NCBI RefSeq assembly: GCF_030028105.1 | Contig: NC_092372.1 | Span: 209,599,898 to 209,663,897 of the forward strand | Origin: Mobula birostris | Taxonomy: Eukaryota | Direction: 5' to 3' | Length of the DNA: 64,000 nt | In this document: piece after piece, positions 189 to 58,100 of the stretch | Layout of the letters: each line of letters opens with the position of its first letter | Numbering within the stretch: position 1 is the stretch's first letter | Notes under the pieces: generated by a model | What the model saw: only the letters and a program-made list of their open reading frames with translations | What the model was told of the DNA's origin: nothing | The model's database searches: none | Translations under genes and position numbers: made by a program

Positions 189-322
189 AAACAAAGAGAT
201 TCAGCAGATGCTAGAATTCTTGAGCAACACACACAAAATACTGAAGGAACTCAGCGAGTCAGGCAGCATCTATGAAGGGGAATGAACAGTTAATGTTTCA
301 GTCCAAGACCCTTCATCAGGAC
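189..322 (-). mobile_element. Penelope-like terminal repeat fragment with hammerhead-like motif
   Basis: Minus strand reads GTC-CTGATGA-A-GGGTCTTGGACT-GAAA-C-ATT-AACTG, followed by the family's GATGCTGCCTG...GAGTTCC...CATCTGC tract. Confidence 0.75.
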
Positions 323-894
323 AAATAATATTGTACATTAATGATCATATTCTACAGTAGAAGGGGAAAATATTAAGGGATAGACCTGCTTAGATTTTAA
401 AAGAATGGATTAGGTACCAAAGGTTATTTCAAAATCAAATAGCATTCTAGATGTCATGTAGCGCAATATTGAAAACAAGGTATTGAGTGGAAGAAAAGAC
501 ATTAGAACTACATTTTTTTTGTTGTTTAGAAAGTGGCATCAAGGTTAGGCCATATTCATAACAGATACATTAAATTATATCTGGCTTGTACCCTCCAAAT
601 ATACAGACCTACCTCTCGGTTTTTTTACACTACCTTACTTTCTATTTTTCTATTGTTTATTTATGATTTATAATTTAAATTTTTAATATTTACTATCAAT
701 TTGTAATCCAGGGAGCGGGAAGTGCAGAATCAAATATCGCTATGATGATGGTGTGTTCTAGTATCAATTGTTTGGTGACAATAAAGTATAAAGTATAAAG
801 TAATGTATAGGGAATTTTCATTGGAATAAAGGTTATGGGCAAGGGGAAAGCTAACAGATATTTTCAAAATTATTAAAATTTATCTCTAAATGTG

Positions 895-1655
895 ACCGGT
901 CAAATAGATAGGGTGGTATAGAAAGTGTTTACATACTTGCTTCCATTGGTTGGGTCGATGCTTATGAGTTAGTAAGTCATGTTGATTCAGTCACATTTGG
1001 AAGGTTGCTTACAGTTCTGACTGCTGCATTGCAGAATGAGCATAAGGTCCTGATACAGGATTTCAACCCAAAACATCAACAAATTGTTTCCCCCTACACG
1101 TGCTGCTTGATCATTTTGAGTTCTTTCAGCACGTCATTTGTTGCTACAGGAGGAAGGTTGAGGCTTGGGAAAGGGTGCAGAAGAGGTTCACCAAGATATT
1201 GTCTGGATTGTGGAGCATTAGCTATATCCAGAGTTTGGACAAACTTGGATAATTTTCACTGGAGGCTGAGGGGTAACCCGATAGAAGCATAAAATTACAA
1301 GAGGCATAGATAACGTAGAGTTGTAGACAATCAGTCTTTTTCCCTAGAGTGAAAATGTCAAACATTAGAAGGCATGGCTTTAAGATGAGATGGGGAAAGA
1401 TTTGCAAGGCAAAGCTTTTTTTACACAGAAAGTGGTAGGTGCCCAGAATGCACTCCCACAGCAGCTGATGGAAGCATGTCACCACACAGTGTTTAAGAGG
1501 CATGTCAACATGTACATGGACAGACAGAGAATGAGGGGATATGGACTATACACAGGCAAATAGGATTCATTTAAATTGGGTTTGTGGTCAGCACAACCAT
1601 TGTGAGCTAAAGGAGCTGTACGTGTGCTGTAATGATCTAAGTTCTATGTTCTTAT
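895..1655 (+). mobile_element. Degenerate CR1 LINE 3' fragment containing a short Penelope-like insert (~1045-1146)
   Basis: Similar to the other CR1 3' ends in the window (GGGTGCAGAAGAGGTTCACCAAG...; TTCTATGTTCT tail). Confidence 0.65.
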
Positions 1656-2201
1656 GGGAGAGGGAATAGTGAATGACGGGATTCACAGCCTTATGCCTTG
1701 GTGACAAAGAGATGCAGACTTAATCTTATCTCTGAAACAATGAATGTGGATGTAACATTTCCACAGAGGACTGTTCTATCACAAGCAGTCTGTGAAATGA
1801 TCTTGGATAAGTATTTGTAAAAGGACAGAGAAATCAGGGTAGATAATTCCACTTAGGTTGCTGAAACCTGTAGAAGATAAAAAAAAAACAGAATAGTCAT
1901 CTTCTGTGTTGAACTCTTTCATGATCTGTTGAAAGTTTCACATAATCATCAAGTCCAAAAAAAGAATTATGTGGTTTAGGCTATTGTGCTGAAATCAGAT
2001 CAATGAGATACGTCTTCAATAGATTAATTTAAATTCATACACCTAACATTCTATGGAGAGCTTAAAATTCTGGAAAACTTTGTAGCTACGATTTCATTGA
2101 CCGCTGTCCAAGTACTAGCTTAAGAAATAAGGACACCTTCCCTTTTAATGTCCTCGCTAATTTTCTTAGAAAAGGGGCGACTTGAGCAGGAAACTACAAT
2201 G

Positions 2202-2273
2202 TTAAATATATTATACTCAAAGGTTCTGTTTGAAATTAAATATATTGTACCCAAAGGTTCTGTTTGAAATTAA
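2202..2273. repeat. Tandem duplication, 34-bp period, 2 copies
   Basis: TTAAATATATTATACTCAAAGGTTCTGTTTGAAA repeated with 2 mismatches. Confidence 0.85.
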
Positions 2274-5200
2274 GTGTGATTTCTAATAGCAAACTTCGCA
2301 TCCAACGAGAAACAGGAAACCTTCAAACGGTATTGTCACATAATTGTTGTTCTTCGCTTTTCAAGGATCAACTTTATTCGCCATATACTTTTACATGTAC
2401 TGGGAAATTGATGTGGCGTGTTGGCGCGACTTGCAACAAAAATCGACAACATTCAACGATTATGCAGAACAAAGAATTACATGAAAATAAAGTTCTAAGT
2501 ATAGATATGGAAGAAAATGTGCATAAATAGATACATACCAGCACGTACTTACCATGTAAACAGCACTAAAAGTGGTTTAAGTTAGTTTAACTCTGGAATT
2601 ACAAGATTTAACAGATGCTTTCATAACTCACGCAATATTTTAGCTTTATCTTCCCTCAATTTAATGCCCAGATATTTAACAGAATTTTAAACTTAACGCA
2701 TTTGTCCCGTAAAACAATTTTTTAAGTGTGAAATCGCCGCTCCGTTAACTTAAGGGCAAAAAAGTTATTTTTCGGATTAAAAAAAACTATGTAATTCCGT
2801 TTACCACCTGTTGAACAGTATGTGCATTTTGTCTGAAAGCTGAGTGAAACGAATGTCTGTCAAACTCAACAAAAACAACATTTTTCGTTACCGGCTCTTC
2901 TTTAAGCGAATGTTCCGTCATATTGCTTAAGATGCGCGTTTTTTGTTTCTTTGTGTTTGTAAAGTAGGTGGTGCTGGAATTGATTTGGGCCGGGGTCTGA
3001 CTATGTGTATTTAGAAGATGGAGGCATCCCCGACCCAGGTTGAGCTGGGCGGCCATAAACAAGTGGGACAAATAAAAATCTTGGGTGTAAATATGTCACA
3101 GGAAAGCAAAAAAAAAGCAACATCTATGCTGTTTAAAAATAGTCTGCCAATGCGAGAGAAAGAGCTAGTGCAATTATGCACATACCTCCAGCGCTACCAT
3201 GGACTAATGAATACAGTGGTTACCATGGCTAGGGCTGACTTCGAGGTGGACTTTGGGGGCCAGGCATTGTCTTCAAGCTTTACCCAAACACAGAGTCCCA
3301 GCTCTCGGCCGCAAGTCTGTGTACTTTGGGCAAACCAGGCCCCTCCTTCCTGGGCCAGAGAGCACAGGTTTCCTTCACTTAAGCATCATGCTTTTGAGTT
3401 TCTCTTGACATCCCCCTTCAGGAGACTGCCAGATCGTTAGTAAGCAACGATGGATGTACTTTTACTTAACTCTAAACAGTACGTGGTGGAGGAGATTGTT
3501 CACACGCCCATGCAACGTTGCAACAAAGCGGTTGCCTGGACTCTTGCTCAATAAGTTTCAAACTCCAATGGACTGCCCTACCTTACTTTTTTTATATATA
3601 ATACGGTCTTGTGATGTCCACACCTTTCCAATCTTACCTTTTAATGGTAACTGTAGGTGCTTTACAATTTCCTAAACAACTCTGGGCTACGTTAGACGGT
3701 TTCAAACACCCAAAGTTCAACATTCTAAGTAAATTTATGATCAAAGTACGTATATACTACCTTGCGGTTCATTTCCTTGCAGGCATTCACAATAGAATCC
3801 ATGAAAATATAAACAAGACTGACAAACAACTAATGTGCAAAAGAAGACAGAGAGTGCAGATCCAAAAACAACCAATAATAAATAAATAAATATTTTTGAG
3901 AACGTGAGTTGTAGAGTCCTTGAAAGTAAATCCATAGGCTGTGGAATCAGTTCAGTGTTGAGTTGAGTGAAGTTATCCGGCTGTTTCAGGAGACCTGTTG
4001 TTATTTTTGTAGGTTATAGCTTTCTAACTATAAAATTCAATCCGAAAAATACATTGATCTAACATTATCTGTCTCTCCACCAATTCTACCAGCCTATCGT
4101 TGTCCGACTCATTGAACTCGTTGAGTTGTAAGGTTTGTTTCATTACAGTATGTAATATGTTTTGTTGTGTAGAACTAAAGATAGACAACAACAACAAAAA
4201 AAATCACCTTTCCCATCTTCGGAACGTCCCAAAACCACTTCACTGTTGGATGTTAATTATTCTGGACGGGTAATTTTTGTCCGTAGATGGATGGATTTAA
4301 TCATGCGGTGCATTTACAGTTTAAACTCTTCAGAGATCTCTGCACATAAGCGAGAGACCTCGCACAGATCCACTTGTTACTGTGGATTAAAATTAAGTTA
4401 TTTTGTAAGGATCTTCGAATGGCAATAATCGCGGTTGCCTCTAATAATTTTACGTGTCTTCTCGATCTTTCAGTGGGGTAGAATGGCCGTTGCGTTTCAA
4501 TTGAAAAGTTTGTGTTTGGAAAATCGACATGTTAACAATAAGTCATCAAAACCCACAGCTGAGAGCCCGGCTCGCGGGTCGGATGGGGGGGGGGTGTTCG
4601 TGGATGAACGCAATCACATTGAAAAAGTTATCTTAATTGATCAACACCATGTGTAAAGTAATCTAATAAAACTTAACGTGGTGAAGAGAGCGTTCAGTTC
4701 TATTTTGCCTGTATAGACCGTGTATCGAGACAAAACAAACTAATAAGAGTCCCTTAGCAACGATATGTTGACTATTGGGGTGTCCTCTGTGTTAACAAAA
4801 AACAAATATTTTTAACAGCGTTCCTTGGATTTGTCATGGAGGCAGAGAGAGAGTTTAAGTTTCATTTCAGTGGCAATGCTTAAGTTTACTATTAAAATAT
4901 CCTTTTATAGGGAAAGTTTCCCAAAGTTAAATTAGGCATCAGAGTAGTGAGTAATATAAAATAGCCGTTATTATCATTAATGTTGTAAAAAAAAAGAACG
5001 AGCATCTCCACAATGTGATCGCTTCCTCGAGCAGCCTATATGGAGTAGGCAACAAGACCAAGGTGGGAGTTATGTGAAAACTTTTAATAACTTCTCGAGT
5101 CACCCCGCCCGCGTGTTGTCTGCGAAAGTTACTTTGATATTGTCCAGTGATTTTTTTTTGAAAGAGGCTTGCCACTGGAAACAAGATAAAAGCAAAATGG

Positions 5201-7300: not shown

Positions 7301-7405
7301 TGTGCAGCCAGTCTTTCTTGCGCGTCTCCAGACTTCGTGTCCTTATATCACCATTTGTCCCTTTTCCCAAAAATACAAAATCCCTGACCCTGCGCCCAGC
7401 CCCTG

Positions 7406-7498: not shown

Positions 7499-7500
7499 AC

Positions 7501-20915: not shown

Positions 20916-20994
20916 GTGAATATTTCAGCATGTAAACACCCCTGAAAATTGAAATGAACAAATAAGATTATCCTTGGATGCAAAGACTAAAAGG

Positions 20995-21597
20995 GCAATT
21001 GTAGCATTTCCCAGTGGTCAACCATTTTAATTCCAGTCCCCTCTCCCATTCCACAACGTTGGTCCATGGCCTCCTCTGAGGCCGTTATCAGGTTGGAGGA
21101 GCAGCAACTCATATTCTGTCTGGGTAGCCTCAAACATATTGGCGTGAATATCGATTTCTCTAACTTTCGGTAATTTCTTCCCCTCTCCTTCCATTCCCTC
21201 CTCTGACTCACCTCTTACCTCTTCCCCTCATCAGCCCATCATCTCCCCTGGTGTTCCTCTTACTTCCCTTTTTCACATGGTATGTTCTCCTCTCCTATCA
21301 GATTCCTCCTTCTTCGGCCCTTTTTTTCCCCAATTATCGTCTCCCAGCTTCTCACTTCATCCCCCTTCCCAGACCCACCTGGCTTCATCTTTCACCTTTT
21401 AGATTGTACTCCTTTCCCACCCTCACCGTCTTATTCTGGCTTTCTCCACCTTCCTTTCCAGTCATCATGACAGGTCTCTGCCCAAAGCATCGACTGTTTA
21501 TTCCTTTATATATGCTGCCTGGCCTGCTGAGTTCCTCCAGCATTTTGTGTGCATTATTCTGGATTTCCAGCATCTGCAGAATACATTGGGTTTGTGT
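20995..21597 (+). mobile_element. Penelope-like element 3' portion (GIY-YIG C-terminus, pyrimidine tract, degenerate hammerhead)
   Basis: Broken frame FPVVNHFNSSPLSH...RLEEQQLIFCLGSL...GVNIDFSNF resembles the Penelope endonuclease C-terminus. Followed by a CT-rich tract and the terminal repeat. Confidence 0.75.
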
Positions 21598-25989: not shown

Positions 25990-26240
25990 CGCAATGTATG
26001 TATGACCGATGTTGGAGAGCTTGGGCAAGACGCACACACTCACACCATGTTGGAAGAACTCGGCAAGTCAGGCAGAATCTATGAAGTGGTATACACAGAC
26101 GGCGTTTCGGGCCGAGATCCTTCATCACACCTTTAACAGGAGTCCTTTTGAAGGGTCTCGGCCCCATACGCCGACTGGCGATTCCCCTCCAAGATGCTGC
26201 CTGGCTGGGTGAGTTCCTCCAGCATTTTGAATGTGCACGT
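25990..26240. mobile_element. Degenerate foldback Penelope-like repeat
   Basis: Arms CGTTTCGGGCCGAGATCCTTCATCA and TGAAGGGTCTCGGCCC... lie in inverted orientation. Confidence 0.7.
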
Positions 26241-29234
26241 TTCCTTCTAAACACAAACCATGCCGCGAGTTTAAACCCCCTTTCCCAATGGAAACCTAAA
26301 CTGAGGAGTATCTGGCCAACTGCATTCATTGCAACAGATGGCCGTGGCGCCAAGTCATTGGGTAGATTTAAAGCGGAGGTTGACAGGTTCTAGGGTAGCC
26401 AGGGCGTCAAATGTTACGGGAGAGAAGGCAAGAGAACGGGTTTGAGAGCGATAATAAATCAACCATTGTGGAATGTCGGAGCAGACTCGACGGTTCCAAT
26501 GGCTTAATTCTGCTCCTATAGGTGTTTTATGATCTTATGAATTCAGAGAATCACTGGATCACCCAGAAGGCCATTTGGCCCACTGTGCGTACTAGCAAAA
26601 CACCCATTCCCCCCCCCCCCCACTTGCCTTACAAATGCCTTCAATTTCCTTTCAATGATGGTTCTGCATCCACCGCTGGAGGTGCAAATCAACGAGTAAC
26701 CGCAGCCCCACTCAGCTCTGAACCCACACGCCCTTTGACCACCAACACCCGCTGTCCCTTTAATTGCCCCCGGCGCTTGATGGACGGTTCTCAGGTACAC
26801 GATACATTCTCGGATGAGAGCAGTAACTGTTTGCATTTTCGCGATAGGATGCGCTGATTGAAGCGGTATCAATTTCTCGCAAACTCAGATTAAAACTAGT
26901 GGTCTTTTCCAAACCTCGCATGCAGGCGAAGAGACGACAAAGAATTGGTTTCCTAAGAAAGCTGTCTCTTAGTTTCCTTCTGAAGTAGTTACTATAATTA
27001 ACTAGAGGGGGGAAACCGTGCACAGACACTGATGATTGAAGGGATTTCATACGTATTTTAAATATTCAAGTTGCCCTGACAAGTAAGCGCTAACTATATG
27101 GAGCATAATGACAGCTTTAGTTTGCCTTGCGCACCACTTAACTGCTCTGGATTCTGTAATATTTACATGTGGAAAGTTGAACCAAGCTACCAAATGCAAC
27201 GGTCCCCACAGGCAACCGCAGACAAATAAGATTGCCAGTATTAATAATGGAGACAGTGGTCTTGTAGGCTCGCCCTCAAATTAAATATAACACTGTTTTA
27301 GTGCAAGGCATGAAAATTAACCTGTGTAAACAGAGGTCAGGACGCTTCCCTAAAGGCTGTACAGCGATGACTTAACACTCATTTCCAGGTTCACAAGCCT
27401 ACTCAAAGAGACATCGCCTAACCTCAATCCTAATTTGTTGGTTTAAAAGCAACTGAGGTTGCTGGAGTAGCTTAGCTTAAAAAAAAATGCACTAAACAAA
27501 ATTCATAGAAAGCCCTTGTATAAAATAAAATTACCAGGCAAATATTAATTGGTGACTTTTTAACTACAGATGCAGAAATTCTGAAATACAAGCGGTAATA
27601 GGACTGTAAGACATAGAAGCCGAATGAGGTCATTCGGTCCATCAAGTCTGCTCTGCTGTTCCTTCAAGGTTGATAATCCCCTTCCCCCATCTTCTCCCCG
27701 TAACCTTTAGCACCCTGACCAATCAAGAACCTATCAACCTCCATTTTAAACATACCCAATGACTTGGCCTCCACAGCCATCTGTAACAATGAACTCCACA
27801 GACTCACCACCCTCTGGCTAAAGAAATTCCTCCTCACCTCTGTTCTTAAAATTGGAAATAGTCTGCTGGATCGGCAAAATCAGTGGAGAGGAAAATAGAG
27901 AAGCATTCTGTGTCCAGATGAGGGGTCTCTACCTGAAGCATCACTGTCCATTTCCCTCCATTGATGCTGCCCGACCCACAGAGTTCCTCCCAATTAAACT
28001 AGTTTCTCAGGTGTTGTCTTCAAGCATAGGGTGGCATGGTGGCGCACTGGTTTGCACAACACTGTAACAGTGCCAACAGTACAGGGTCAATTCCCACCAC
28101 TGTCTTTAAGGAGCTTGTTCATTCTCCCTGTAACCATGTGGGTTTCCTCTGGGTGTTCTCATTTCCTCCCACAATCCAAAAATGTACAGGTTAGTAGGTT
28201 AGTTCCTCACGTGAGTGTAATTAGGTAGTATGAGCTCGTTGGACCAAAGAGGCCTGTTACCATTATGTAACTGCACTAAACTGTCCCTCTTCCTCCCTCA
28301 TAGGTGCTGCCTGCCCTGTCGATTATTTTCAGTATTTTCTTTTAACCTGCCCTTCCTCCAGAAGCCAGATTAGAGAATCACGGGAATCAGGTATCATCTC
28401 GTTGCCCGATGGGATACAACATCTGAGACATGGTGGCTCAGCTAGTAGATGTGCCATCTCACAGCACTAAAGACCAGGTTCGATCCTGACCTTGGGTGCT
28501 GACTGTCTGGAGTTTGCATGTTCTACCTGTGACCACATTGGCCTCCTCCTGCACTCCAAAGACATCCTGCTGGTAATTTACTTTACTTAAGCCTATTACC
28601 TCCATTGGTCCAAGGCTGCCTACCGAACCTCACCTGAATCATCTACCAGTCTCTCATGTTGTCTTCAGGTGTAGCCCATCTTCAAAGATCCTTCCTTTCT
28701 CCGGGATGAGATCTTTGGAGCTTCTGTGGCCATTTCTGTAGCTCTGGGTTTTTATGGGATGGGGTTGCTAGCCCCCTGCCCAACCCTCCTCCTTTTACAG
28801 CCGGCTTGGGACTGTCCATGGCAGAGTTAGTTTAACTGGCTGCTGCAGAGTGTTGAGTTAGTGGTAGAATATGGGAGGGGATGATAGGGATGTGGGGAGA
28901 ATAGAATATACAATTGGTCTAGAATTAATAGTCAGCGTAGACTCAGAGGGCTGAATGGCCTACTTCCATACTGTATCTCTTCTTTAAGGTGAACAGAGGA
29001 AAGTATAGGTGGATGATTGAGAGTAGGTGGTGCTTGGAACACATTGCCAGGGTGGTGGCAGATGCAGCTGCATTAGAGATCACCCGGCTGAAAGAAAAAC
29101 GGAGGGTTATGAGCTGTGTAGGAGGGAAGGGTTAGATTGATCATGGAGTCCTTTAAAAGGTTGGCACAGCATCATGAGCCAAAGTGCCCATGCTGCTCAG
29201 TTCTATGTTCAATATTCCATAACTGTCTGACCAG

Positions 29235-41635: not shown

Positions 41636-43619
41636 TCAATAAATCCATTATAGAATAATAACCTTAACAGAATCAATGAAAGTTCTTCATGCTATCAAAG
41701 TGAAAATCTTGCACTTTGCCATATCCCACTGTCACCTCTTGCCCAGTTAACCTATCCTTACTCTTTGCAGACCCTCTGCAACCCCCGCTGAGCACTTTGC
41801 CAACCAACATTTTGTTTACAGCATCTAAACTGAAATGCTTTGAAGCCAGATTGCAGTTAGTTACCACCTCAGTACTGATCCCTGCTTGCAACAGTCTGAA
41901 AATAGCATAGTTATTCACTATGTCTGTTCCCTTTCCTTTAAGCAATTCTCTGTGCACAAATATTATCTCACACTTGTGAAGTCTTCACTTGGCTAACAAC
42001 TGTTTTTCGATCTTACATATCCCATGGTTACAACCTGCAACACACAAAATGCTGGAGGAACTCAGCAGGTCAGGTAATGACTACGGGGCGAAGCAGTGGA
42101 CTTTTTGGGCAGAGGCCTTTCACTGGGATTGCTCATCTGTAGATGCTGCCTGACCCACTGAATTCCTCCGGCATCTTGCTGAAGATTTCCAACATCTGCA
42201 GTATCTCTTGTATTTCCTTAAATATTTCCGGCAGATTTATTGAAAGTTACTTGGCCCGCGGTGACTCGGTTCAGTATTAGTGGGATTCTCAATGACTGTT
42301 TCTTTCTTAGTGATGCATTCCAGCACTTTACGACCATAAGATATAGGAGCAGAATTAGGCCATTTGGCCCATCGAGTCTGCACCACCATTCCATCATGGC
42401 TGATTTATTATCCTTCTCAACCCCATTCTCCAGCTTTCTCCACATAACTTGTCATGCCCTTGGGCTCCACAGCCATCTATGGCAATGAATTCCACAGATT
42501 TACCACCCTCTGGCTAAAGAAATTTTTTGCAATGTCTGTTCTAAGCAGACGTCCCTCTAGTCTGGGGCTGTGCCTGCTGGCCTAGACTCCCCCACTATAG
42601 GAAACGCCTTCCCCACATCCACTCTATCCAGGCCTCTCAATATTCAATAGGTTTCAATGCAATCCCCGCCCCCCATTCTTCTGAACTCCAGTGAGCACAG
42701 GCCCAAGCCATCAAATACTTCTCACATTCACCCTTTCCTTCCCAGAATCATACTCGTGAACCTCCTCTGGACCCTCTCCAACTCCCTTTGCTCCACTGAT
42801 CTTTGAATTTTCTCCCCATTTTGAAAATAGTCTATATTTTTATTCCTTCTACCAAAGTGCATGATCGTACAGTTCCCGTAACTATATTCAATCTGCCACT
42901 TCTTTGCCCATTCTTCTAATCCTCACATCGTCCGCAAACTCACAAAGCTATCAATTCCATCATCCAAATCATTAACATACAATGTGAAAAGAAGTGGCCC
43001 TAACAGCAACCCCTGCAGAACATCAATAGTCACCAGCAGACAACCAGAAAAGGCCCCCTTTTTTCCTGCCAGTCAGCCAAACTACCTATGCTCATATTTT
43101 CCCTGTAATACCATGGGCTCTTGTTAAATAGCCTTAGGTGTGGCACCTTGCCAAATGCATTCTGAAAATCCAAGTATACAACTTCCACTGACTCTCCTTT
43201 GTCTATCCTGCCTGTTACTTCCTTAAGAATTACAACAGATTTGTCAGGCAAGATTTCCCTTTAAAGAAACCATGCTGACTTGGGCCTATTTTATCATGTG
43301 CCTCTGAGTACTATGGAGCTTCATCCTTAATAATTCAAGTTAACTGGCCTATAATTTCCTTGTTCTGCATCCCTCTCTTCTTAAAGAGAGGAGTGACATA
43401 TGCAATTTTTCAGTCCTCCCAAACCACTGCAGAATCTAGTGATTTTTGAAACATCACTACCAATGCCTCCACAATCTCTTCAGCCACCTCTTTCCGAACC
43501 AAATGGGGTGTAGTCCATCTGGTCTTGGAGACATATCTACCTTCAGATCTTTCAGATTCCCAATCCCCTCTCCTTATTTCTGCCCCCGACATGTTTGAAT
43601 TTCTGGCGTATAGCTAGTT

Positions 43620-45571: not shown

Positions 45572-47021
45572 TGTGTCTTCCACGGTGAAGACTGACACAA
45601 AATGCTTATTAATTCCATCTGCTATTTCTCTTTCCCCCATTACTACCTCCCCAGCATGGCTTTTTAGTTGCCTTCAGCTGTTTTTTAAAAGCTTCTCCAT
45701 CCTTTAACTTCCCACTAATTGTTACTCCATTATATGCCCTCCCTTTCTTTTTGCTGTCTTTCCTTGTCAGCCCAGTTTGTGTCATCCTCCTTTTAGAATA
45801 CTTCCTTGGGATGTATTTATTTTGCACCTTCCGAATTGCTCCCAGAATCTCCATTCATAACTGTTATGCCATCATCCCTGTTAGTGTCCCCTTCAATTAG
45901 GTTTGGTCAGCTCCTCTCCCATGACTCTAAAATTCCCTTTACTCTGTAGACTATGATACTGATATATCTGACTTTATCTTCTCCCTCTCAAACTGCAGGG
46001 TGAATTCTATCATTACGATCACAGTCTCCTAAGGGTTGCTTTATTTTAAGATCCCTAATCAAATCTGGTTCATTAAACAACACTCAATCCAGAATTACCT
46101 TTTCGCTAGAGGGATAAACCACAAGCTGCTCTAAAGGGCATCTCATAAGCATTCTACAAATTCCCTCCCTTCAGATCCAGTACCAACCCAATTTTCCCAA
46201 TTTACCGGTATATTGAAATTCCCCATGACAATTGTAACATTGTCCTTTCTACATGCCTTTTCCAACTCTTGGTATAATTTATATCTATATTGTGGCTACT
46301 GTTCAGAGGCCTGTATATAATTCCTGTCAGGTCTTTTCACCCTTGAAGTTTCTTAACTCAACCCAGAATGATTCTACATCTTCTGATCCTATGTAACCAC
46401 TTTCTAAGGATTTGATTTCATTTTTTATCGACAGAGCCACCCCATCCCCTCTGCCTACCTGCTGGTCCTTTCAATACAAGTTGTACCCTTGGATGTTAAG
46501 CACCCAATTATGATCTTTTTTTCAGCTATGACTCAGTGATGCCCACAATGTTGGACCTGCTAATCTCTAACTGTGCTACAAGATCCATTATTCCATACAC
46601 TGTGCACATTTAAATATTACACCTTCAGTCCTGTATTCATCACCCTTTTCAATTTTGCCCCCATGTTACACCTTAACTAATCCCACTGCCCCATCTTCTG
46701 CCTGTCCATCCTCCCAGTCTCACTACACGCTGCATCAACTGCTCCATGCTTAGCCCTATCACGCCAGTTTCACGCCACTGCAGAATTAGTTTAAACTCTC
46801 CCCAACAGTGCTAGCGCACCTGCCCACAAGGATATTGGTCCCGCTTGGATTCAGGTGTAAGCCATCCTTCTTGTTCAGGTCATACCTTCCCCAGAAGAGA
46901 TCAGGATGATCCAGAATTTGAAGCTGTGCCCCCTGCACCGAACCTTCAGCCATGCATTCATCCGCCAACCCTCTCTGGCACGTGGTACAGGCAGCACTCC
47001 AGAGCTTGCTACCCTTGAGGT

Positions 47022-47243
47022 AACAACAGGAATTCTGCAGATGCTGGAAATTCAAGCAACACACATCAAAGTTGCTGGTAAACACAGCAGGCCAGGCAGC
47101 ATCTATTGGAAGAGTTTCAGTCGACGTTTCAGGCCGAAACCCTTCACCAGTCCTGACGAAGGGTCTCGGCCTCAAACGTCGACTGAAACTCTTCCAATAG
47201 ATGCTGCCTGGCCTGCTGCGTTTACCAGCAACTTTGATGTGTG
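47022..47243. mobile_element. 222-bp foldback Penelope-derived element with 12-bp TSD
   Basis: TACCCTTGAGGT at 47010-47021 and 47244-47255. Inverted arms 47059-47145 and 47158-47244. Confidence 0.9.
47148..47185 (+). ncRNA. Type I hammerhead ribozyme-like motif (representative copy; G12 mutated)
   Basis: CAGTC-CTGACGA-A-GGGTCTCGGCCT-CAAA-C-GTC-GACTG. Stem I CAGTC/GACTG is perfect and the GUC cleavage triplet is present, but GAAA is changed to CAAA. Confidence 0.7.
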
Positions 47244-50044
47244 TACCCTTGAGGTCCTGCTTTTTAGCTTTCGAACTAACCTCCTGTATTCTCTCTTCAG
47301 GACTCCATCCATTTTGCTACCTATGGCATTGGTACCAATATGTACCACGAATTCCGGCTGTTCACCCTCCCCCTTTAGAATGCCGCAGACCCGATCCGAG
47401 TCCTCCCTGACTTTGGCACATGGGAGGCAACATACCCATCCAGGTGTCTCTTTCACGTTCACAGAATCTCCTGTTTGCCCCTCTTAACTGTGGAATCCCC
47501 CTTCGCTTCTGAGCACAACGCTGCATGCCCCCCTGGAAGATGGGCCCCTCACCCACCCCACAACAGTATCCAAAGCGGTATACTTATTATCGAGGGGACC
47601 GGCCACAGGGGTACTCTGCACGGGCTGCCTATTCCCTTTCCCTCTCCCTGCAGTTGCCCAGGTACCTGCCTCCCGCATCTACCTCCCTTACGAGGTGGCT
47701 CCTATCACTTCATTTCCCCTTAAGAGCTGAAGGTCATCTAGCAACCAATCCTGTTCCTTAACACGGTCTCTGAGGAGCTGCAGCTCGATGCAGCTTGCGG
47801 ATGTAGTTTTCAGGGCGATCGGAGGGTCGCCCAGAGTTCCCAAATTTTCACACAAAGAACAATACCACTAACCCCGGATCCATTCTCAATGCACTCGCTG
47901 TGCACTAATAGGCGAAGATTAAAAACTCACTGGAAACTTGCTGCATTTTCTGGCAAGAGATGCCGGAATTTGATCTGTTTTTCCTTCCCGCTCGTGAACA
48001 AGTTCACAGCTCATTAAGGACGTTATGTGCAAATTTCCCCTCACCTCGTTGCTGACGGCAATGAAGGGGAAATTATTCCGTTTGTGTAGCGCCCGTAGCA
48101 AAGTTAAAACATCCCAGGGCACTTTTCCACCTTCCCAAAATGCAGTCACTGTCAGCGTTGTTTACTCTGCGGTGCCTGGGGTACGAACCGCGAGAGTCTA
48201 AACTCTCGATTATCTGTCAGTATCGATTCTCCGCTCTGGCTGCGGAAGATGGAGCTTCCTCTGAGGAATACACGAATTAAGTGGGGTGAAGGAAGGCTGC
48301 TCTTGGGGTCTAAAAGCAATTTAATCCTGTAGACGGACTAACAACTTGGAATTGACCCGAATATTTTTTAAAAATGTAGGAATATTTTCACTTGCAGTTA
48401 AATTTGCGTTGTTGAACGCAGGCAGCCCGGAGTTAACGATTCTGAAGAGGTTAACACTACAGTAAGGTTGCCTGAGATTATCCCGCAGCGTTTCCGTTTT
48501 GCTGCTGTCATATGATTGTTCACAATAGTGTTTGTTCCTTCCACGTGTCTTCCCTTCCACGTTATCTGCCCGTTCCCGAGGTGATTTAAAAGTGCCTCCC
48601 TGGGTGCAGAAGGACATCATTTCCTCAGGGGGCAGGATCGCCTTCGGAAACGGACGACGGGGCAGGGAGGGGACAGAGAGACGGGGCGGGTGGGTGATGG
48701 CGGAGTATCAGGATCCGCCGCTGCCAGACCGCGAGAGGTGGAGGAGAGGAGGATGTCATATTGTTCCTGGGCTGAGATGACATCGCAAAGGTTCCTTAAG
48801 TATGGACATCCGCTGCAAAGCTCCGGGAGTAGTGCTGTCAAATTGCCGCATTCAGCTGAGACCACCAGGAACAAGGTTTCCCAATCTGGGGTTCAGGGAC
48901 CCTCCATTAATGGTAACATACAGCTCGGGAATCCCTGACTGGCAACTTGTCCGGGATCTGTTGCCTGATTTTGGAGTGTCTCCAATCAAAACAACTTTTA
49001 TAGACGACCTGTCACCGCCGTTTTAACTTCTGTTGTTTATTTCAAGATTAAACTTGATAAAAAGAATTAACACGCCCTAGAGCTCTTACTGTTCTTAATG
49101 CCATTGGTCAATACATTCAGCAGTGCTAGCTCATAGCACCATGTTTTTTTATGTTAAATGTTTAATTTTTTCTTGTGAATGCTGCTTATACGATGCTATA
49201 TGCCTGCGATGCTGCTATGTTAGATTTAATTGTGCCTGCGCACACATACACCGTACCTATATCCCACCCAGCTGCACCGTGGCTTGCTAAGGCAACTCAT
49301 GTGCTTCTGCAGATGCTGGAAATCCGGAGAAACACACACAAAATGCTGCACTGGTGAGGGGTCTCAGCCTGCAACATTGACTGTTGCATCATCCTCCACA
49401 GGTGCTGCCTGACCTGCTGAGTTCCACCAGCATTTTGCGTGTGTGTTATTCTGGTGTGGCAACTACGCAGCCCATGACAAGAAACTGCCGAGGGCTGGGG
49501 ACAGAGCTCAGCACATCACAGAAATCACACTCCCTCCTTGGACTGGACACTCTTCATTGCCTTGGTAACATTGCCAGCATAATCAAAGATCCCAGACATT
49601 TTCCCTTCTCCCCTCTTCCATTGGGTAAAAGCCTGAAAACATGTTGGGCAGCTTCTTCCCCAGTGTTATAAGAATACTGAGTGATTCGCTAGTGCAACAA
49701 GATGGACTCTCGACCTCACAATCTGCCTCATTGTGACCTTGCACCTTACTATCTACCTGCACTTCACTCTCTCTGTACCGTAACACTTCAATCTGTACTC
49801 GGTTATTGTTTCATCTTGCACTTCCTCAATGCCCTGTTGTAATGAATTGATCTATATGGATGGCAGGAAAGTTTCTCACTGGGCCTCAGTACATGTGACA
49901 GTAATAAACCAATTTGCCAATTTCCTTTTGTATATGACATAAACTGATTTTTGACTTTTGGCTTTGGCTGTTTTTCCCATCTGAAACAGTAAGGCCAGAT
50001 CAAGGGCAGTTTAGTTTACATAAGCCATAAATGTCCGGTATGAA

Positions 50045-50890
50045 GATACTCAGCAGGACAGGCAGCATCTATGGAGAAGAGAACATTCAACGTTTCAGGC
50101 AGAGACTCCTCAGCAGGACTGGAGAAAAGAAGACGAGGAGTCAGAGCTAGAAGGTTGGGGGGGGGGGAGAAACACAGCGTGATGGGTGAAACTGGGAGGA
50201 GGGACAGGTGAAGTAAAGAGCTGGGAAGTTCATTAGTGAAAGAGGTACAGGGCTGGAGAATGGGGAGTCTGATAGCAGAGGACAGAAGGCCGTGGAAGAA
50301 AAGGGGGGAGGAGCACCAGAGGGAGACGATGGACAGGCAAGGAAATACGGTGAGAGAGAGAAAAGGGAAGGGGGAATGGAGAAGTGCGGGGGGGGGGGGG
50401 TGGGACATTACCAGAAGTTTCAGAAATCGATGTTCATGCAATCAGGTTGGAGGCTACCCAGACAGAATACAAGATGTTGCTCCTCTAACCTGAGTGTGGC
50501 CTCTTCACTCTCTCGCTTTATCTCTTTGCCTGCCTATCACCTCCCTCTGGTGCTCCTCCCCCCTTTTCTTTCTTTCATGGCCTTCTGTCCTCTCATTAGA
50601 TTTCCCCTTCTCCAGCCCTGTATCTCTTTCACCAATAAACTTCCCACTCTTTACTTCACCTCTCCCCCTCTCCCGGTTTCACCTGTCACCTACCGCCTTG
50701 TACTTCTTCCTCTCCTCCCCCCACCTTCTTGCTCTGACTTCTAATCTCTTTTCTCCAGTTCTGCTGAAGGGTCTCAGCCCGAAACATCGACTGTACTCTT
50801 TTCCATAGATGCTGCCTGGCCTGCTGAGTTCCTCCAGCATTTTGTGTTTGTTGATTGGATTTCCAGCATCTGTAGATTTTCTCTTGCTTG
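50045..50890. mobile_element. Inverted pair of Penelope-like 3' portions
   Basis: Minus copy about 50045-50505 and plus copy about 50506-50890. Hammerhead-like motifs at about 50085-50122 (-) and 50756-50793 (+; CAGTT-CTGCTGA-A-GGGTCTCAGCCC-GAAA-C-ATC-GACTG). Confidence 0.8.
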
Positions 50891-51139: not shown

Positions 51140-52150
51140 AACGCAAACACGAGGAAATCTGCAGATGCTGGAATTTCAAGCACTTTTATTTGTGATTCTG
51201 CAGATGATGGATTCCAGGGCATCACACACAAAATGCTGGAGGAACTCAGAAGGTCAAGAACATCTATGGAAATGAATAAACAGTTGATATTTTGGGCTGA
51301 AACCCTTCATCAGGACTAGAAAGGAAGGGGGAAAGATGAGAAGGTGGGAAGAGCAGAAGGGGTACAAGCTAGAAGGTGATAGGTGAACCTGAATGGGTGG
51401 AGGATGAAGTAAAAAACAGAGGTGATAGATGCAAAAAAAGGGCTGGAGAAGAAGGAATTTGATAGAAGAGGAGAGTGGGCCATGGGAGAAAGGGAAGGAG
51501 GAGGGGCACCGAGGAAGTGATAGTCAGATGAGGAGAAGAGAAAGGTAAGGGGAGGGGCAGAGTGGGGAATTGAAGAAGACAGAAGATGTAGGGAGAAATT
51601 ACCAGAAGTTAGAGAAATTGATGTTATACCATCAGGTTGGAGGCTACTCCAGTTTGAGGATAAAGGGGAAGCCTTTTAGGACCGAGATTAGGAAAAACTT
51701 CTTCACACAGAGAGTGGTGAATCTGTGGAATTCTCTGCCACAGGAAACAGTTGAGGCCAGTTCATTGGCTATATTTAAGAGGGAGTTAGATATGGCCCTT
51801 GTGGCTAAAGGGATCAGGGGGTATGGAGGGAAGGCTGGTACAGCGTTCTGAGTTGGATGATCAGCCATGATCATACTGAATGGCGGTGCAGGCTCGAAGG
51901 GCTGAATGGCCTACTCCTGCACCTATTTTCTATGTTTCTATGTTTACCCAGATGGTCTATGAGCTGTTGCTCACTGTCCAACCTGAGAGTGGCCTCATCT
52001 TGGCTGTAGAGGAGGCCATGTACTCATATATCAGAATGGGAGTGGAGATTGGAATTAAAATGGTTGGCCACTGGGAAATCCTGCTTTTTTGAGGATGGAG
52101 CGAAGGTGCTCGACAAAGCAGTCCCCCAATCTATATTGTATCTCACCAAT
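51140..52150 (-). mobile_element. Penelope-like element interrupted by young CR1 3' end (51650-51944, +)
   Basis: Hammerhead-like motif at 51281-51319 (-), purine tract and GIY-YIG C-terminal remnant. CR1 piece translates LRIKGKPFRTEIRKNFFTQRVVNLWNSLP. Confidence 0.8.
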
Positions 52151-52249
52151 ATTATCAGGTGTGTTATTTTCACCTGTCTTTCCATAATAAGTTAAAATAA
52201 ACAGGGATCAATAACATGCCTGGAGGATTCATACCAGGGGAACATCGAC

Positions 52250-54765: not shown

Positions 54766-55374
54766 TACCTTCAGAAGGTGGCGTCTCACAAAGGTGGCAT
54801 CAGGGACCCTCATCATCTGGGGCATGGCATCTTCTCATTTCTACCATCAGAGAGGAGGTACAGGAGCCCGAAGACCCATACAATGTGTTAGGAACATCTA
54901 CTTACACTCCCATCAGATTCCTGAACAGTCCATGGCACTACCTCGCTATTTCTCTTTTGCATTATTTATTTATCTTTAAATTTCATGACATCAGTGATAA
55001 TAAATGTGAATCTGATACTGAGTACAGGATGGGACATAATAGCTCGGTATAGCAACTACTCTGCATGTGACTGCAAGAAACTGCAGAGAACTGTTGTTCA
55101 ATACATCTAGAAAGCAGCCTCCCCTGCATGGACTTGTTGCTTCAGTAAAAGCAGCCAGCGTAATCAAAGATCCCACCCACCCTAAACATTCTCATTTCCC
55201 CTCTTCTATTGGGCAGAAGATACAAAAGCCAGGGTACACGTACCACCAGGCTCAAGGACAGCCTCTACCCACTGTTATAAGAGGACTGAATATTTTGTTG
55301 GTATCATAAAATGGATTCTGAACCTCACTCTACCCTGTGATGATCTTGCACTGTATTGTTTACCTGAACTGCAC

Positions 55375-56076
55375 TTTCCAACATGTTGGTCCATGGCCTC
55401 CTCTACTGGAATGATGAGACCATTCTCAGGGTGGAGGAGCAATATCTCATATTTCATCTGGGTAGACTCCAACCTGATGGCCATGAACATTAGTTCCTCT
55501 AACTTCCAGTGACTTTTCCTCATGCCCCTTCCCTCTTCTTCAATTCCCCTCTCTGGCCCCGCTCTTATTTTTTCTCTTCTCGCCACCTGCCTATCACCTC
55601 CCCCCAGTGCTCTTTCTCCTTCCCTTTCTCCCATGGCCCACTCTCCTCTCCTATTGGATCCTTCTTTTCCACTTATCACCTCGTAGCTTCTTACTTTATC
55701 CCCCTCCCCTACCTGGCTTCACCTATCACCTATCCTGACGAAGGGTCTCGGCCTGAAAAGTCAACTGCACCTCTTCCTATAGATGCTGCCTGGCCTGCTG
55801 CGTTCACCAGCAACTTTTATGTGTGTTGCTTGAATTTCCAGCATCTGCAGAATTCCTGTTGTTCACCTATCACCATCTAGCTTGTACTCCTTCCCCCCCC
55901 CCCCCACCTCCTTATTCTGGCTTCTTCCCCCTTCCTTTCCGGTCCTGATGAAGGGTCTGGACCCAAAACGTCGAGGGCTTACTCCTCTCCATAGATGCTG
56001 CCTGACCTGCAGAGCCCCTCCAGCATTTTGTATTTGTTGCTAAGGATTTCCAGCATCTGCAACATTTCTTGTGTTT
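55375..56076 (+). mobile_element. Penelope-like element with a younger terminal-repeat copy (55731-55861) inserted inside
   Basis: MLVHGLLYWNDETILRVEEQYLIFHLGRLQPDG. TSD TTCACCTATCACC at 55718-55730 and 55862-55874. Hammerhead-like cores at 55735 and 55945. Confidence 0.85.
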
Positions 56077-56899
56077 ATGATTTGCTGTATCTCGTGGTGC
56101 CCTTTGCACTTTATTCAATGTTGTTATTGTTTTACCTTATTCTATGTCAATGCACTGTGTAATGATTTCATCTGTATGAACAGTATGCAAGACAAGGTAT
56201 TTGCCGTACTTCAGTGCATGTGACAATAGTAAACCAATTCTACTTCCTTTGGCCCAACTCATCCATGTTGAACCAAATGTCGATGTGAACTAGTCTAGAT
56301 CTCCCTCAATGTTCTCTGTCTGTATACGCATCTAAATGTAATTGTACCTGCCTCTACCACTTCCTCTGGCAGCTCACAGGCATCCATGTGAAAAACCTGC
56401 CCATCAGGTTTTCTTTAAATCATTTCCCTAATATTCTAAGCCCATGCTCTCTCATTTTAGGCTCCCTGTCCTTGGAAAAAATGATCCTATCCATGTCATT
56501 CATAATTTTATAGTTCCCTACAAGGTCACCCCTCAGCCTTCTATGAACGTTGAACATAGAACTTTACAACACAGCAAAGGCCCTTTAGCCCACAATATTG
56601 TGCCAACCCTTTAACATACTCAAAGATCAAACTAACATTTCTGTCCGATATAACCCTCTATTTTTCTCTCATGCATCTTAGCACAAGGTCTATTTGGAAA
56701 GATTGGGTGTGGGGTGAAATGTGGCAGCGAGGTCCAAGCCCAGAGCCTATCAAAGCAACAAGGCCCGGGTCCTAGACCAAGGAATGACCCAATGTTCGGA
56801 CAATTTAAACACCAGCCAGACTGAATGGCAGGGTTTCGAGGGACGACACGAGGGTTGGGCCGGTTCTGCTTGCTGCTTCATGATGTTTATGAAATTACA

Positions 56900-57723
56900 G
56901 TAATTACAGAGGCATGAGAGAGGAGTTGGCCAGAATTGATTGGAAAAGAACACTGGCAGGGATGATGGCAGAGCAGCAATGGCTGAAATTTCTGAAACAA
57001 TTCGGAAGGCACAGGATATATACATCTCAAACAGGAAGAAGTATTCTAAAGACAAGATAACACACCCATGGCTAACAAGGGAAGTTAAAGAAACATAAAA
57101 GCCAAAGAGAGGACATATAATTGAGCAAAAAATTAGTTGGGAAGCTTTTAAATACCAACAGAAGACAAGTAAAAAGTAATTAAAAAGGGAAAGATGGAAT
57201 ATGAAAGTAAGCCAGCCAATAATATTAAAGAGTGAGCCAAAAGTTTCTTCAGATGCATAAAGTGTAAAAGAGAGGCAAGAGTGGATTTTGGACCACTGAA
57301 AAACGATGCTGGAGAGGTAGTAACAGGGGATGAGAAAAGGCAGAAGAACTGAATAAGTATTTTGTATCAGTGTTTACTGTGGAAGGCTCTAGCAGTATGG
57401 TGGAAGTTCTAGGTGCCAAGGGCTATGAAGTGTGTGAAATTACCATTACTAGGGAGAAGGTTCTTGGGAACCTGAGAGGTCTGAAGGTAGATAAGTCACC
57501 TGGACCAGATAGTCTATACCCCACGGTTCTGAAAGAAGTGGTTGAAGAGATCGTGGAGGCATTAGTAATGATCTTTCAAGAATCACTAGATTCTGGAATG
57601 GTTCCAGAAGACTGGAAAATTGCAAATGTCACTCTGCACTTCAAGAAGGGAGAGAGGCGGAAGAAAAGAAATTATAAGCCAGTCAGTCTGACCTCGGTGT
57701 TTGAGAAGGTGCTGAAGTCGATT
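56900..57723 (+). mobile_element. CR1 ORF2 internal fragment
   Basis: LKVDKSPGPDSLYPTVLKE...VPEDWKIANVT...NYKPVSLTSV. Confidence 0.85.
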
Positions 57724-58100
57724 CAACACACACAAAATGTTGGAGGAACTCAGCAAACCAGGCAGCATCTGTGGAAAAAAGTACAGTCGACATTTCGGGC
57801 CGAAACCCTTCGGCAGGACTGGAGGAAAAAAAGCTGAGGAGCAAATTTAAAAGGTGGGGGGAGGGGAGTGAGAAACACGAGGAGATAGGTGAAACTGGAA
57901 TGGGGAGGGAATGAGGTAGAGCTGGGAAGTAAATTGGTAAAAGAGACAGAAGGCCATGGAAGAAAGAAAAGTGGGGGAGGAGCACCAGAGGGAGACGACG
58001 GGCAGGCAAGGAGATAAGGTGAGAGAGGGAAAAGGGGGTGGGAAATGGTGAAAGGGAGGGGGATGGGGGGCATTACCAGATGTTGGAGAAACCGATGTAA
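57724..58100 (-). mobile_element. Penelope-like 3' portion with hammerhead-like motif
   Basis: Minus strand CAGTC-CTGCCGA-A-GGGTTTCGGCCC-GAAA-T-GTC-GACTG at 57784-57821. Confidence 0.8.

What the first reader, a model, noticed from the sequence alone, without database searches (positions are those of the whole stretch)
287..57821. Dispersed family of minimal hammerhead ribozyme motifs carried by Penelope-like repeats around shh
Seen: about 16 copies of one motif, at roughly 287(-), 1045, 21459, 26097(-), 26148, 27913, 42095(-), 47118(-), 47148, 49351, 50088(-), 50756, 51281(-), 55735, 55941 and 57784(-). The by-eye consensus CAGTC-CTGATGA-A-GGGT-CTCG-GCCC-GAAA-C-GTC-GACTG gives stem I CAGTC/GACTG, core CUGANGA, a short stem II hairpin, GAAA, a palindromic ACGU in place of stem III and a GUC cleavage triplet. 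In longer copies it follows a GIY-YIG-like C-terminus. Established: Penelope-like elements carry minimal type I hammerheads whose palindromic stem III favours dimeric cleavage. Inference: this is a very abundant self-cleaving-RNA-bearing family in this genome. Every copy here has at least one lesion, but the lesions differ, so the ancestral consensus looks intact. I cannot tell whether this family has been described.
Basis: partly seen in the sequence, partly recalled or inferred. Interest (0 to 1): 0.85.

Follow-up and report, generated by a model that had tools for sequence, protein, structure and literature searches.

The report
Decayed Penelope-element hammerhead ribozyme copies
The window is littered with broken tail-end fragments of a Penelope-like jumping gene, each carrying the small hammerhead ribozyme motif that such elements are already known to carry, so the sighting is real but ordinary.

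Summary
All 16 listed motif copies exist, far beyond chance: 7 matches against 0 expected for a 25-nt pattern. They come from about 13 insertions of one repeat.

The longer copies read: GIY-YIG endonuclease C-terminus, stop, about 285 nt of CT-rich 3'UTR, the 39-nt motif, then a tail of about 96 nt. A profile of the protein remnants finds 51 relatives (best E 9e-16), some above Pfam's GIY-YIG cut-off. Inverted 5'-truncated pairs, a 12-bp target duplication and a one-sided 37-nt tail fit published Penelope-like element (PLE) anatomy (PMC8557442).

The majority motif has every trait of the PLE "min-HHR" of Cervera and de la Pena 2014 (PMC4209133).

Against this:
- Rfam's hammerhead models find nothing.
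- There is no covariation.
- No copy here is intact.
- The link to a reverse transcriptase could not be shown with tools.
- Cleavage was not tested.

The family is extremely abundant in a related genome's DNA run. Three first-reader notes report the same motif elsewhere in this genome (unchecked). Verdict: a known kind, of low interest.

The parts
204..329 (-). PLE 3'-end fragment, 5'-truncated at the motif; motif at 287-325
   Evidence: nhmmer E 2.8e-33; register; core intact but 4 broken pairs
1044..1145 (+). Old, heavily decayed fragment; motif at 1044-1082
   Evidence: nhmmer E 4.4e-05; 14 differences from the majority
20978..21582 (+). Long fragment: GIY-YIG C-terminal remnant 20978-21170, stop, 285-nt 3'UTR, motif 21458-21496, tail. 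Lies in the hedgehog intron, sense to the gene
   Evidence: tblastn to P0156 and P0003; 4 core lesions; gene exons
26015..26235 (.). Inverted pair of truncated copies; motifs at 26096-26134(-) and 26139-26177(+)
   Evidence: inverted repeat 26082-26124 / 26149-26191, 77% complementary; nhmmer
27906..27990 (+). Decayed fragment; motif at 27909-27946
   Evidence: nhmmer E 4.2e-12; 12 differences including a 1-nt deletion
42039..42199 (.). Minus-strand fragment with motif 42094-42132, abutting a tail-only plus-strand arm at 42137-42199
   Evidence: nhmmer hits on opposite strands; the repeat finder reported no inverted repeat of 30 nt or more here
47010..47021 (.). Left copy of the 12-bp target-site duplication of the foldback insertion
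   Evidence: read directly; the same 12 letters recur at 47244-47255
47022..47243 (.). Youngest insertion: 222-bp head-to-head foldback. Motifs at 47118-47156(-) and 47147-47185(+). The minus arm carries 37 extra tail bases (47022-47058) that the plus arm lacks
   Evidence: arms 47059-47150 / 47153-47244, 95% complementary; sequence read
47244..47255 (.). Right copy of the 12-bp target-site duplication
49309..49450 (.). Plus-strand fragment with motif 49345-49383, abutting an inverted tail-only piece at 49309-49368(-)
   Evidence: nhmmer hits on both strands; alignment row; the repeat finder reported no inverted repeat of 30 nt or more
50041..50890 (.). Head-to-head pair of long copies (lineage X). 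Minus arm about 50041-50520, with GIY-YIG remnant 50402-50515 and motif 50084-50122. Plus arm about 50500-50890, with motif 50755-50793. Both motifs have C at core position A6
   Evidence: four inverted-repeat segments, 76-87% complementary
51195..52207 (-). Longest fragment: nearly the whole GIY-YIG domain (51946-52207) in three frame-shifted pieces, an unrelated repeat inserted at 51650-51941, 3'UTR, motif 51281-51319, tail
55368..55866 (+). Fragment of the young lineage: GIY-YIG remnant 55371-55481, 3'UTR with an internal deletion of about 65 nt, motif 55729-55767, full tail
   Evidence: 92% identical to the 47022-47243 insertion over 129 nt
55862..56079 (+). Older 5'-truncated fragment directly downstream of the previous one; motif at 55939-55977
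   Evidence: (74% identity to its neighbour)
57707..58100 (-). Lineage X fragment; motif at 57784-57822 with all 11 pairs intact and A6 to C as its only core change

Best explanation
The 16 motifs are the hammerhead-like element of the terminal (pseudo-LTR, 3') region of an endonuclease-bearing Penelope-like retrotransposon, probably of the Neptune-like type. They are scattered as about 13 dead insertions, mostly 5'-truncated.

Shown here:
- Each unit reads GIY-YIG C-terminus, stop, about 285 nt of CT-rich UTR, the 39-nt motif, then a tail of about 96 nt holding a conserved 9-bp long-range stem.
- The copies are 5'-truncated at varied points.
- Three insertions are inverted pairs by two methods, and two more by nhmmer only.
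- One pair has a 12-bp target duplication, and two pairs carry extra tail bases on one arm only.

Inferred from the published work on PLEs: active source elements are transcribed from tandem or partial-tandem arrays. The motif lacks its own helix III, so it folds with a second copy through the palindromic ACGU into a double hammerhead. This cuts after GUC, slowly and probably helped by the element's own protein. The reverse transcriptase starts cDNA synthesis inside the tail at a GIY-YIG nick.

The copies in this window have been decaying neutrally since insertion, largely by CpG deamination. None is expected to cleave.
For: - Family and register.
- Unit anatomy. The stop-to-motif distance is 285-286 nt in the two copies measured, worked out from the coordinates.
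- GIY-YIG: the profile of six window pieces (A2) found 51 proteins at E<=0.01 among 88 candidates, best 9.2e-16. Pfam GIY-YIG scored above its cut-off in 2 of the 9 scanned, and at E<=1 in 6 of 9. tblastn of 6 relatives places remnants at 4 window loci. Atlas neighbours are eukaryotic GIY-YIG clusters.
- Linker: a C-x4-C-x2-C motif sits just upstream of the endonuclease in longer relatives. PMC8557442 (passages) ties such a linker to Neptune-type PLEs.
- Insertion anatomy: against PMC8557442 (inverted 5'-truncated copy; a 30-40 bp tail often present at one end only) and PMC11167929 (passages: reverse transcription starts internally, giving the 'tail' signature).
- Motif traits: an unpaired base after A9 in all 16 copies (A in 12 of 16, counted by eye on the alignment); G10.1-C11.1 or G-U in 14 of 16; ACGU in the majority; C17 in 13 of 16 and U in 3. 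These match the four unforced features listed in PMC4209133 (read: abstract, results, discussion).
- Constraint in the source elements: identity between the two lineages is 59% in the 3'UTR, but 75% in the motif, 69% in the tail and 70% in the coding end. Those last three equal the within-lineage values.
- Abundance: 341,648 contigs of one DNA run of a close relative lay on 4.6 kb. Summed word depth was 6.0 million in the bin 50750-50903, against about 14-26 in unique bins.
Against: - No Rfam hammerhead family matches, at gathering score or at E<=10, either over the whole window or on two small stretches around the best copies.
- There is no covariation. 77.1% of cells pair, against 78.4% in shuffles (449 of 500 shuffles at least as high), and only 2 cells have changes on both sides.
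- Core position A6 is changed in 7 of 16 copies. It is C in all 3 motifs of lineage X (2 insertion events), so one lineage seems to have moved with a crippled core.
- The majority motif's lowest-energy fold (-13.0 kcal/mol) pairs part of the core. The hammerhead fold is 2.2 kcal/mol worse.
- No copy in the window reaches a reverse transcriptase.
- In relatives, RT-like motifs were seen by eye only. Pfam RVT_1 hit 0 of 10, the PDB sequence search found nothing relevant, hhalign to two LINE RT ORFs gave probability 0.2%, and the AlphaFold model was unusable at pLDDT 38.
- A single 50-aa piece found nothing among 1.84 billion proteins.
- All runs were contigs, so no RNA ends could be seen, and the 'RNA?' labels are guesses.
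Confidence: 0.88

Rival explanations
1. The motif is kept in the source elements for a non-catalytic job, such as binding the element's protein or marking the template for reverse transcription. On this view hammerhead cleavage plays no part in this family's life cycle.
For: - Lineage X carries C at the invariant A6 in all 3 of its motifs, which come from 2 insertion events.
- PMC11167929 (passages) reports that hammerhead mutants do not affect insertion in vitro, that cleavage needed the protein, and that no RNA-seq reads began or ended at the cut site.
- PMC8557442 (passages) notes that clades without hammerheads proliferate well.
- PMC4209133 reports low activity in vitro.
Against: The majority state keeps all 11 scored core bases plus the GUC site and the palindrome, which a mere binding site need not do. 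Two events are a thin basis. The effect of A6 to C on activity is recalled from the hammerhead mutagenesis literature and was not checked here.
Confidence: 0.25
2. Some or all copies belong to short non-autonomous derivatives (non-LTR retrozymes or SINE-like riders on the PLE tail) and are not truncated autonomous PLEs.
For: The youngest lineage (47022-47243, 55368-55866) is seen only as short pieces, and one has an internal 3'UTR deletion. A 2026 preprint (10.64898/2026.07.22.740005; abstract and first part of results read) derives animal retrozymes from PLE terminal repeats.
Against: 55368-55866 still begins inside the GIY-YIG coding end. Tandem Repeats Finder finds no tandem array holding the motif (8 rows, none at a motif). 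Truncation points vary as in target-primed reverse transcription.
Confidence: 0.07
3. This is the 3' tail of an ordinary LINE or SINE that merely resembles a hammerhead by chance.
For: The window holds several non-PLE LINE remains (RVT_1 ORFs and an AP-endonuclease ORF). The core boxes alone are not rarer than chance. Rfam sees no hammerhead.
Against: The coding end upstream is GIY-YIG, not an AP or REL endonuclease. No LINE RT ORF is collinear with a motif copy. The motif shares four unforced traits with published PLE min-HHRs (PMC4209133).
Confidence: 0.03

Closest known systems
Minimal type I hammerheads (min-HHR) of metazoan Penelope-like elements (Cervera and de la Pena 2014, PMC4209133). 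Lunse, Weinberg and Breaker (RNA Biol) is known to me only through its citation in PMC6765202.
   Same: - Core boxes, an unpaired base between A9 and 10.1, G10.1-C11.1, and a 5-bp helix I.
- No helix III of its own, but a palindromic 15.2-16.2.
- Location in the terminal repeat region of PLEs.
- Mostly single dispersed motifs in truncated elements.
- Pairs on opposite strands 100-700 bp apart; the pairs here lie as close as overlapping.
- Presence in non-mammalian vertebrates.
   Different: Helix II here is 4 bp with a 4-nt loop, against 7-8 bp in the schistosome families. The density here (16 motifs in 64 kb) and the depth suggest far more copies than the roughly 4,000-9,000 intact motifs reported for coelacanth and Xenopus. 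However, none of the 16 copies here would pass a descriptor.
Poseidon element PAc of Anolis carolinensis (Frangieh et al. 2024, PMC11167929)
   Same: A hammerhead lies upstream of the place where genomic insertions end. There is a tail made by internal start of reverse transcription near a stem-loop. The endonuclease is GIY-YIG.
   Different: In PAc the motif overlaps the ORF start. Here it lies about 285 nt after the stop codon of the preceding unit, and what follows it in a full element is unknown. The linker motif in relatives points to Neptune-type, not Poseidon-type.
Animal non-LTR retrozymes (PMC7229834, listing and abstract only; preprint 10.64898/2026.07.22.740005)
   Same: Type I hammerheads related to PLE terminal repeats.
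   Different: Retrozymes are tandem arrays of short ORF-less units with a canonical helix III. Here there are no tandem arrays, and coding remnants are attached.

Membership tests
PLE minimal hammerhead (min-HHR) | Core boxes CUGANGA and GAAA, plus U16.1 and an H at position 17 | tested here: met
   Present in the majority of the 16 copies. All 11 scored core bases are intact in only 2 of 16 single copies. Position 17 is C in 13 copies and U in 3.
PLE minimal hammerhead (min-HHR) | Helices I and II formed | tested here: met
   Helix I has 69.6% of cells paired and helix II 90.6%. Slid controls give 15-40% overall. The structure was derived from the consensus, which favours it.
PLE minimal hammerhead (min-HHR) | Unpaired base between A9 and 10.1, and a G10.1-C11.1 pair | tested here: met
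   The extra base is present in all 16 copies (A in 12, counted by eye). The 10.1-11.1 pair is G-C in 7, G-U in 7 and unpaired in 2.
PLE minimal hammerhead (min-HHR) | No helix III of its own; palindromic 15.2-16.2 that allows a dimer | tested here: met
   ACGU in the majority. The C-G is kept in 6 of 16 copies; the rest are mostly lost by CpG decay.
PLE minimal hammerhead (min-HHR) | Compensatory changes between family members | tested here: not met
   The covariation score is 0.153 against 0.177 in shuffles, and 2 cells have changes on both sides. With 16 neutrally decaying copies this is a weak test.
PLE minimal hammerhead (min-HHR) | Self-cleavage after GUC, as a dimer | not testable with these tools
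   All runs were contigs, so no RNA ends could be seen.
Rfam hammerhead families (covariance models) | A match to any hammerhead model | tested here: not met
   0 hammerhead hits at gathering score and at E<=10 on the whole window, on 57740-57870 and on 47090-47215. PMC4209133 needed a special descriptor for these helix-III-less motifs.
Penelope-like elements, endonuclease-bearing | C-terminal GIY-YIG endonuclease | tested here: met
   Remnants lie at 4 loci. The profile found 51 relatives, best E 9.2e-16. Pfam PF01541 scored above its cut-off in P0017, P0006 and P0156. The window pieces alone gave no Pfam hit.
Penelope-like elements, endonuclease-bearing | PLE-type reverse transcriptase in the same ORF | tested here: inconclusive
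   No window copy reaches that far. Relatives P0164 and P0162 show RT-like motifs upstream of the linker, by eye only.
Penelope-like elements, endonuclease-bearing | 5' truncation with tandem or inverted partial copies | tested here: met
   3 inverted pairs by the repeat finder and nhmmer, and 2 more by nhmmer only, of about 13 insertions. Truncation points vary.
Penelope-like elements, endonuclease-bearing | A 30-40 bp tail present at one end only; target-site duplication | tested here: met
   The foldback 47022-47243 has a 37-nt one-sided extension and a 12-bp duplication. The 50041-50890 pair has about 37 extra model positions on one arm. The 26015-26235 pair shows no such difference.
Neptune-type PLEs | Cys motif (CX2-5CxxC) in the linker before the endonuclease | tested here: inconclusive
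   C-x4-C-x2-C was seen by eye in relatives P0089, P0108, P0072, P0147, P0156, P0162, P0164, P0149 and P0167. No window copy includes the linker.
Non-LTR retrozymes | Tandem arrays of short ORF-less hammerhead units | tested here: not met
   Tandem Repeats Finder gave 8 rows, none at a motif. Coding remnants are attached in 4 insertions.

The most novel reading that the evidence does not exclude
One sub-lineage of this element (50041-50890 and 57707-58100) transposed at least twice while carrying C at the invariant hammerhead position A6. Yet the motif and tail as a whole stayed as conserved between lineages as the coding sequence. That would mean the 'ribozyme' is kept in PLEs for something other than, or besides, self-cleavage, such as recognition by the element's protein.
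Probability: 0.2. Interest if true: 0.45.

Novelty: already known. Interest (0 to 1): 0.2.

Why it matters
It gives a clean worked example of how Penelope-like elements look after insertion: hammerhead, tail, foldbacks and target duplication. It also shows that this genome is saturated with them, at about one motif per 4 kb beside and inside a hedgehog gene. The kind has been in print since 2014.

Whether this particular family is catalogued could not be checked. Repbase and Dfam are not on hand and supplements were closed. A 14-nt string of the motif occurs in no held paper.

The only point with some research value is the A6-to-C sub-lineage. It bears on the open question of whether hammerhead catalysis is needed for PLE mobility.

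Tried and rejected
- Rfam at gathering and permissive thresholds gave no hammerhead hit.
- Pfam on ten long ORFs near the copies and on seven short remnant pieces gave nothing for the element.
- An Atlas look-up of a 50-aa remnant gave no usable hit.
- phmmer of that piece against 1.84 billion representatives gave 0 hits.
- Profile and walk searches reached relatives of up to 304 aa but no Pfam RT.
- The PDB sequence search, hhalign against the window's LINE RT ORFs and an AlphaFold model (pLDDT 38.2) did not establish an RT. No fold search was run on so poor a model.
- Read laying gave abundance and orthology only. All four runs were contigs, so no starts or ends were available. The runs labelled 'RNA?' cannot be told from low-coverage DNA: unique bins are empty and repeat bins are deep. 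I therefore draw no conclusion on expression.
- I considered and dropped the idea that the tail opens the element's ORF. An ATG-led open frame follows the motif, but nothing tested it.
- The organism was not identified, because run and organism names are coded. I did not try to get round that.
- The hedgehog gene's paralogue (shh or another) was not tested.
- Supplementary files were not opened. They include Table S1 and Figs S2-S4 of PMC4209133 and the species tables of the 2026 preprint, and they could show whether this family is already listed.

Full report
OBSERVATION. The motif family is real.

A 25-nt pattern taken from the one exact core match gave 7 matches at up to 3 mismatches, against 0.00 expected in 100 shuffles. 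The bare boxes CTGATGA...GAAAC gave only 1 match against 0.37 expected. So the signal lies in the repeated family and not in the boxes.

A profile built from the 7 matches with their flanks found 23 hits at E<=10 and 18 at E<0.001. The 7 seeds match it by construction. Two hits are tail-only pieces.

No copy is intact. 14 of 16 have at least one change in the 11 scored core bases, and the other two have four broken pairs each. 34 of 123 differences are CpG transitions at 8 of 39 positions. This fits methylated-CpG decay after insertion.

WHAT THE REPEAT IS. Seven longer copies align over up to about 600 columns.

Upstream of the motif lies about 285 nt of CT-rich sequence. Before that is a reading frame ending in a stop. 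Its translation looks like the end of a GIY-YIG nuclease.

The window pieces alone gave nothing in Pfam, in the Atlas or by phmmer against 1.84 billion proteins. A profile of six pieces, however, found 51 proteins at E<=0.01 among 88 candidates, best 9.2e-16. They are 80-105 aa long and all come from one unnamed 'eukprot' gene set.

Pfam GIY-YIG scored above its cut-off in 2 of the 9 scanned, and at E<=1 in 6 of 9. It was above cut-off again in 1 of 10 longer relatives. A second search showed at least 266 paralogues at E<=1e-10, so this is a repeat-encoded protein. tblastn of six relatives places remnants at four window loci: 20978-21170, 50402-50515, 51946-52150 and 55371-55481.

Longer relatives carry a C-x4-C-x2-C motif just before the endonuclease. 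Craig et al. 2021 (PMC8557442, passages) associate such a motif with Neptune-type PLEs.

Two relatives also carry what look by eye like RT motifs upstream. No tool confirmed an RT. No window copy reaches that far.

INSERTION ANATOMY. The 16 motifs come from about 13 insertions.

Three are head-to-head inverted pairs by both repeat finder and nhmmer, at 26015-26235, 47022-47243 and 50041-50890. Two more are supported by nhmmer only, at 42039-42199 and 49309-49450.

The youngest is 47022-47243. Its arms are 95% complementary. It is flanked by a 12-bp direct duplication, and one arm runs 37 nt further into the tail than the other.

PMC8557442 describes exactly this picture: 5'-truncation, an adjacent inverted truncated copy, and a 30-40 bp tail often at one end only. 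Frangieh et al. 2024 (PMC11167929, passages) explain the tail by reverse transcription starting inside the template RNA near a stem-loop.

The tail here holds a conserved 9-bp long-range stem, without compensatory changes.

No tandem array holds the motif.

THE MOTIF AS A HAMMERHEAD. The majority has the following:
- a 5-bp helix I and the CUGAUGA box;
- one unpaired base after A9;
- a 4-bp helix II starting with G-C, closed by a 4-nt loop;
- GAAA, then ACGU with no loop;
- C17.

Cervera and de la Pena 2014 (PMC4209133; abstract, results, discussion and the start of methods read) list four features that emerged unforced in PLE min-HHRs: consensus families, the base between 9 and 10.1, G10.1-C11.1, and palindromic 15.2-16.2. 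The last three are all present here. They also report single dispersed motifs in truncated PLEs, and pairs on opposite strands, in fishes, coelacanth, Xenopus and reptiles.

EVIDENCE AGAINST, TOLD IN FULL.
- Rfam's hammerhead models give nothing in four searches.
- The 16 copies show no covariation: 77.1% of cells pair against 78.4% in shuffles. The named structure does beat all slid registers, which give 15-40%, but it was derived from the consensus.
- The majority's lowest-energy fold is 2.2 kcal/mol better than the hammerhead fold.
- A6 is changed in 7 of 16 copies.

EVIDENCE FOR CONSTRAINT IN THE SOURCE ELEMENTS. Two lineages can be told apart by their 3'UTRs. Between them the 3'UTR is 59% identical, against 75-79% within lineages. 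The motif (75%), tail (69%) and coding end (70%) are as alike between lineages as within them. So the masters kept the motif and tail while the UTR drifted.

All three motifs of one lineage, from two insertion events, nevertheless share C at A6.

ABUNDANCE AND RELATIVES. The best holders are DNA runs of 'organism A' and of a relative, 'organism B'.

Contigs of the relative cover unique parts of 47618-51169 at about 97% identity, including the flank of the 49345 copy. So at least that insertion predates their split (table 8).

341,648 contigs of that run lay on the 4.6-kb stretch at 85% likeness or more. Summed word depth was 0.4-6.0 million over the motif-bearing bins, against about 14-26 over unique bins. 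The tool warns that this is not a copy number, but the family is clearly very abundant.

Loose-end consensus strings from other copies repeat the 3' half of the motif.

Nothing can be said on expression or cleavage.

MECHANISM.
- Shown: the anatomy, the GIY-YIG link, the insertion signatures, the intact majority motif, and decay of the copies.
- Inferred from the literature: dimeric cleavage through the ACGU palindrome in tandem transcripts, slow and probably protein-assisted (PMC4209133; PMC6765202 passages; PMC11167929 passages), and insertion by nick-primed reverse transcription starting in the tail.
- Open: whether cleavage is needed at all. Frangieh et al. found it dispensable in vitro.

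NOVELTY. The kind is known. Three first-reader notes report the same motif on other pieces of this genome, two of them describing an intact copy and one a parent RT-GIY-YIG element. These are unchecked and are not counted as support.

I could not check whether this family is catalogued. Repbase and Dfam are not on hand, supplements were closed, and a 14-nt motif string is in no held paper. Three papers hold 'hammerhead ribozyme', 'Penelope' and 'Chondrichthyes' together. The organism here is unknown to me.

VERDICT. This is an ordinary, already described kind of element, of low interest.

Noticed in passing
window 28780-28833 (-): Sub-threshold match to the type-P1 twister ribozyme (RF03160): 34.9 bits against a gathering score of 67.2, E 0.0008 over the whole window. 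The UAA, GUCCCAAGC and GGAGGG boxes and the P2 and P4 pairs are kept. One optional hairpin is missing and P1 is poor. It could be a second kind of self-cleaving motif near the hedgehog gene.
   Followed up: partly
window 7495-8046 (+) and 23806-24612 (+): Hedgehog gene exons: HH_signal, E 5.5e-34, and Hint, E 3.2e-78. The PLE fragment 20978-21582 lies in the intron before the Hint exon, in sense orientation. Its motif has 4 core lesions. Which hedgehog paralogue this is was not tested.
   Followed up: partly
window 50084-50122 (-), 50755-50793 (+), 57784-57822 (-): All three motifs of one sub-lineage (two insertion events) share C at the invariant hammerhead position A6. This suggests the lineage moved with a crippled core.
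   Followed up: partly
window 47090-47215: The young foldback scores as a generic long hairpin against many miRNA-precursor models, all far below gathering score (best MIR6136, 56.5 bits against 99). PLE foldbacks could be a source of hairpin RNAs.
   Followed up: no
window 33459-34739 (+), 40252-40779 (+), 58880-59671 (+), 59979-60479 (+), 61198-62025 (+): Remains of ordinary LINEs (RVT_1 ORFs and one AP-endonuclease ORF), unrelated to the motif family. An unrelated repeat at 51650-51941 is 96.6% identical to 33243-33533 and interrupts a PLE fragment.
   Followed up: no
tail after each motif, e.g. window 50794-50890 (+): The roughly 96-nt tail has a conserved 9-bp long-range stem around a GU-rich loop. 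Copies end either inside the GU-rich run or just after the stem, giving two classes of 3' end. This may mark two start points of reverse transcription.
   Followed up: partly
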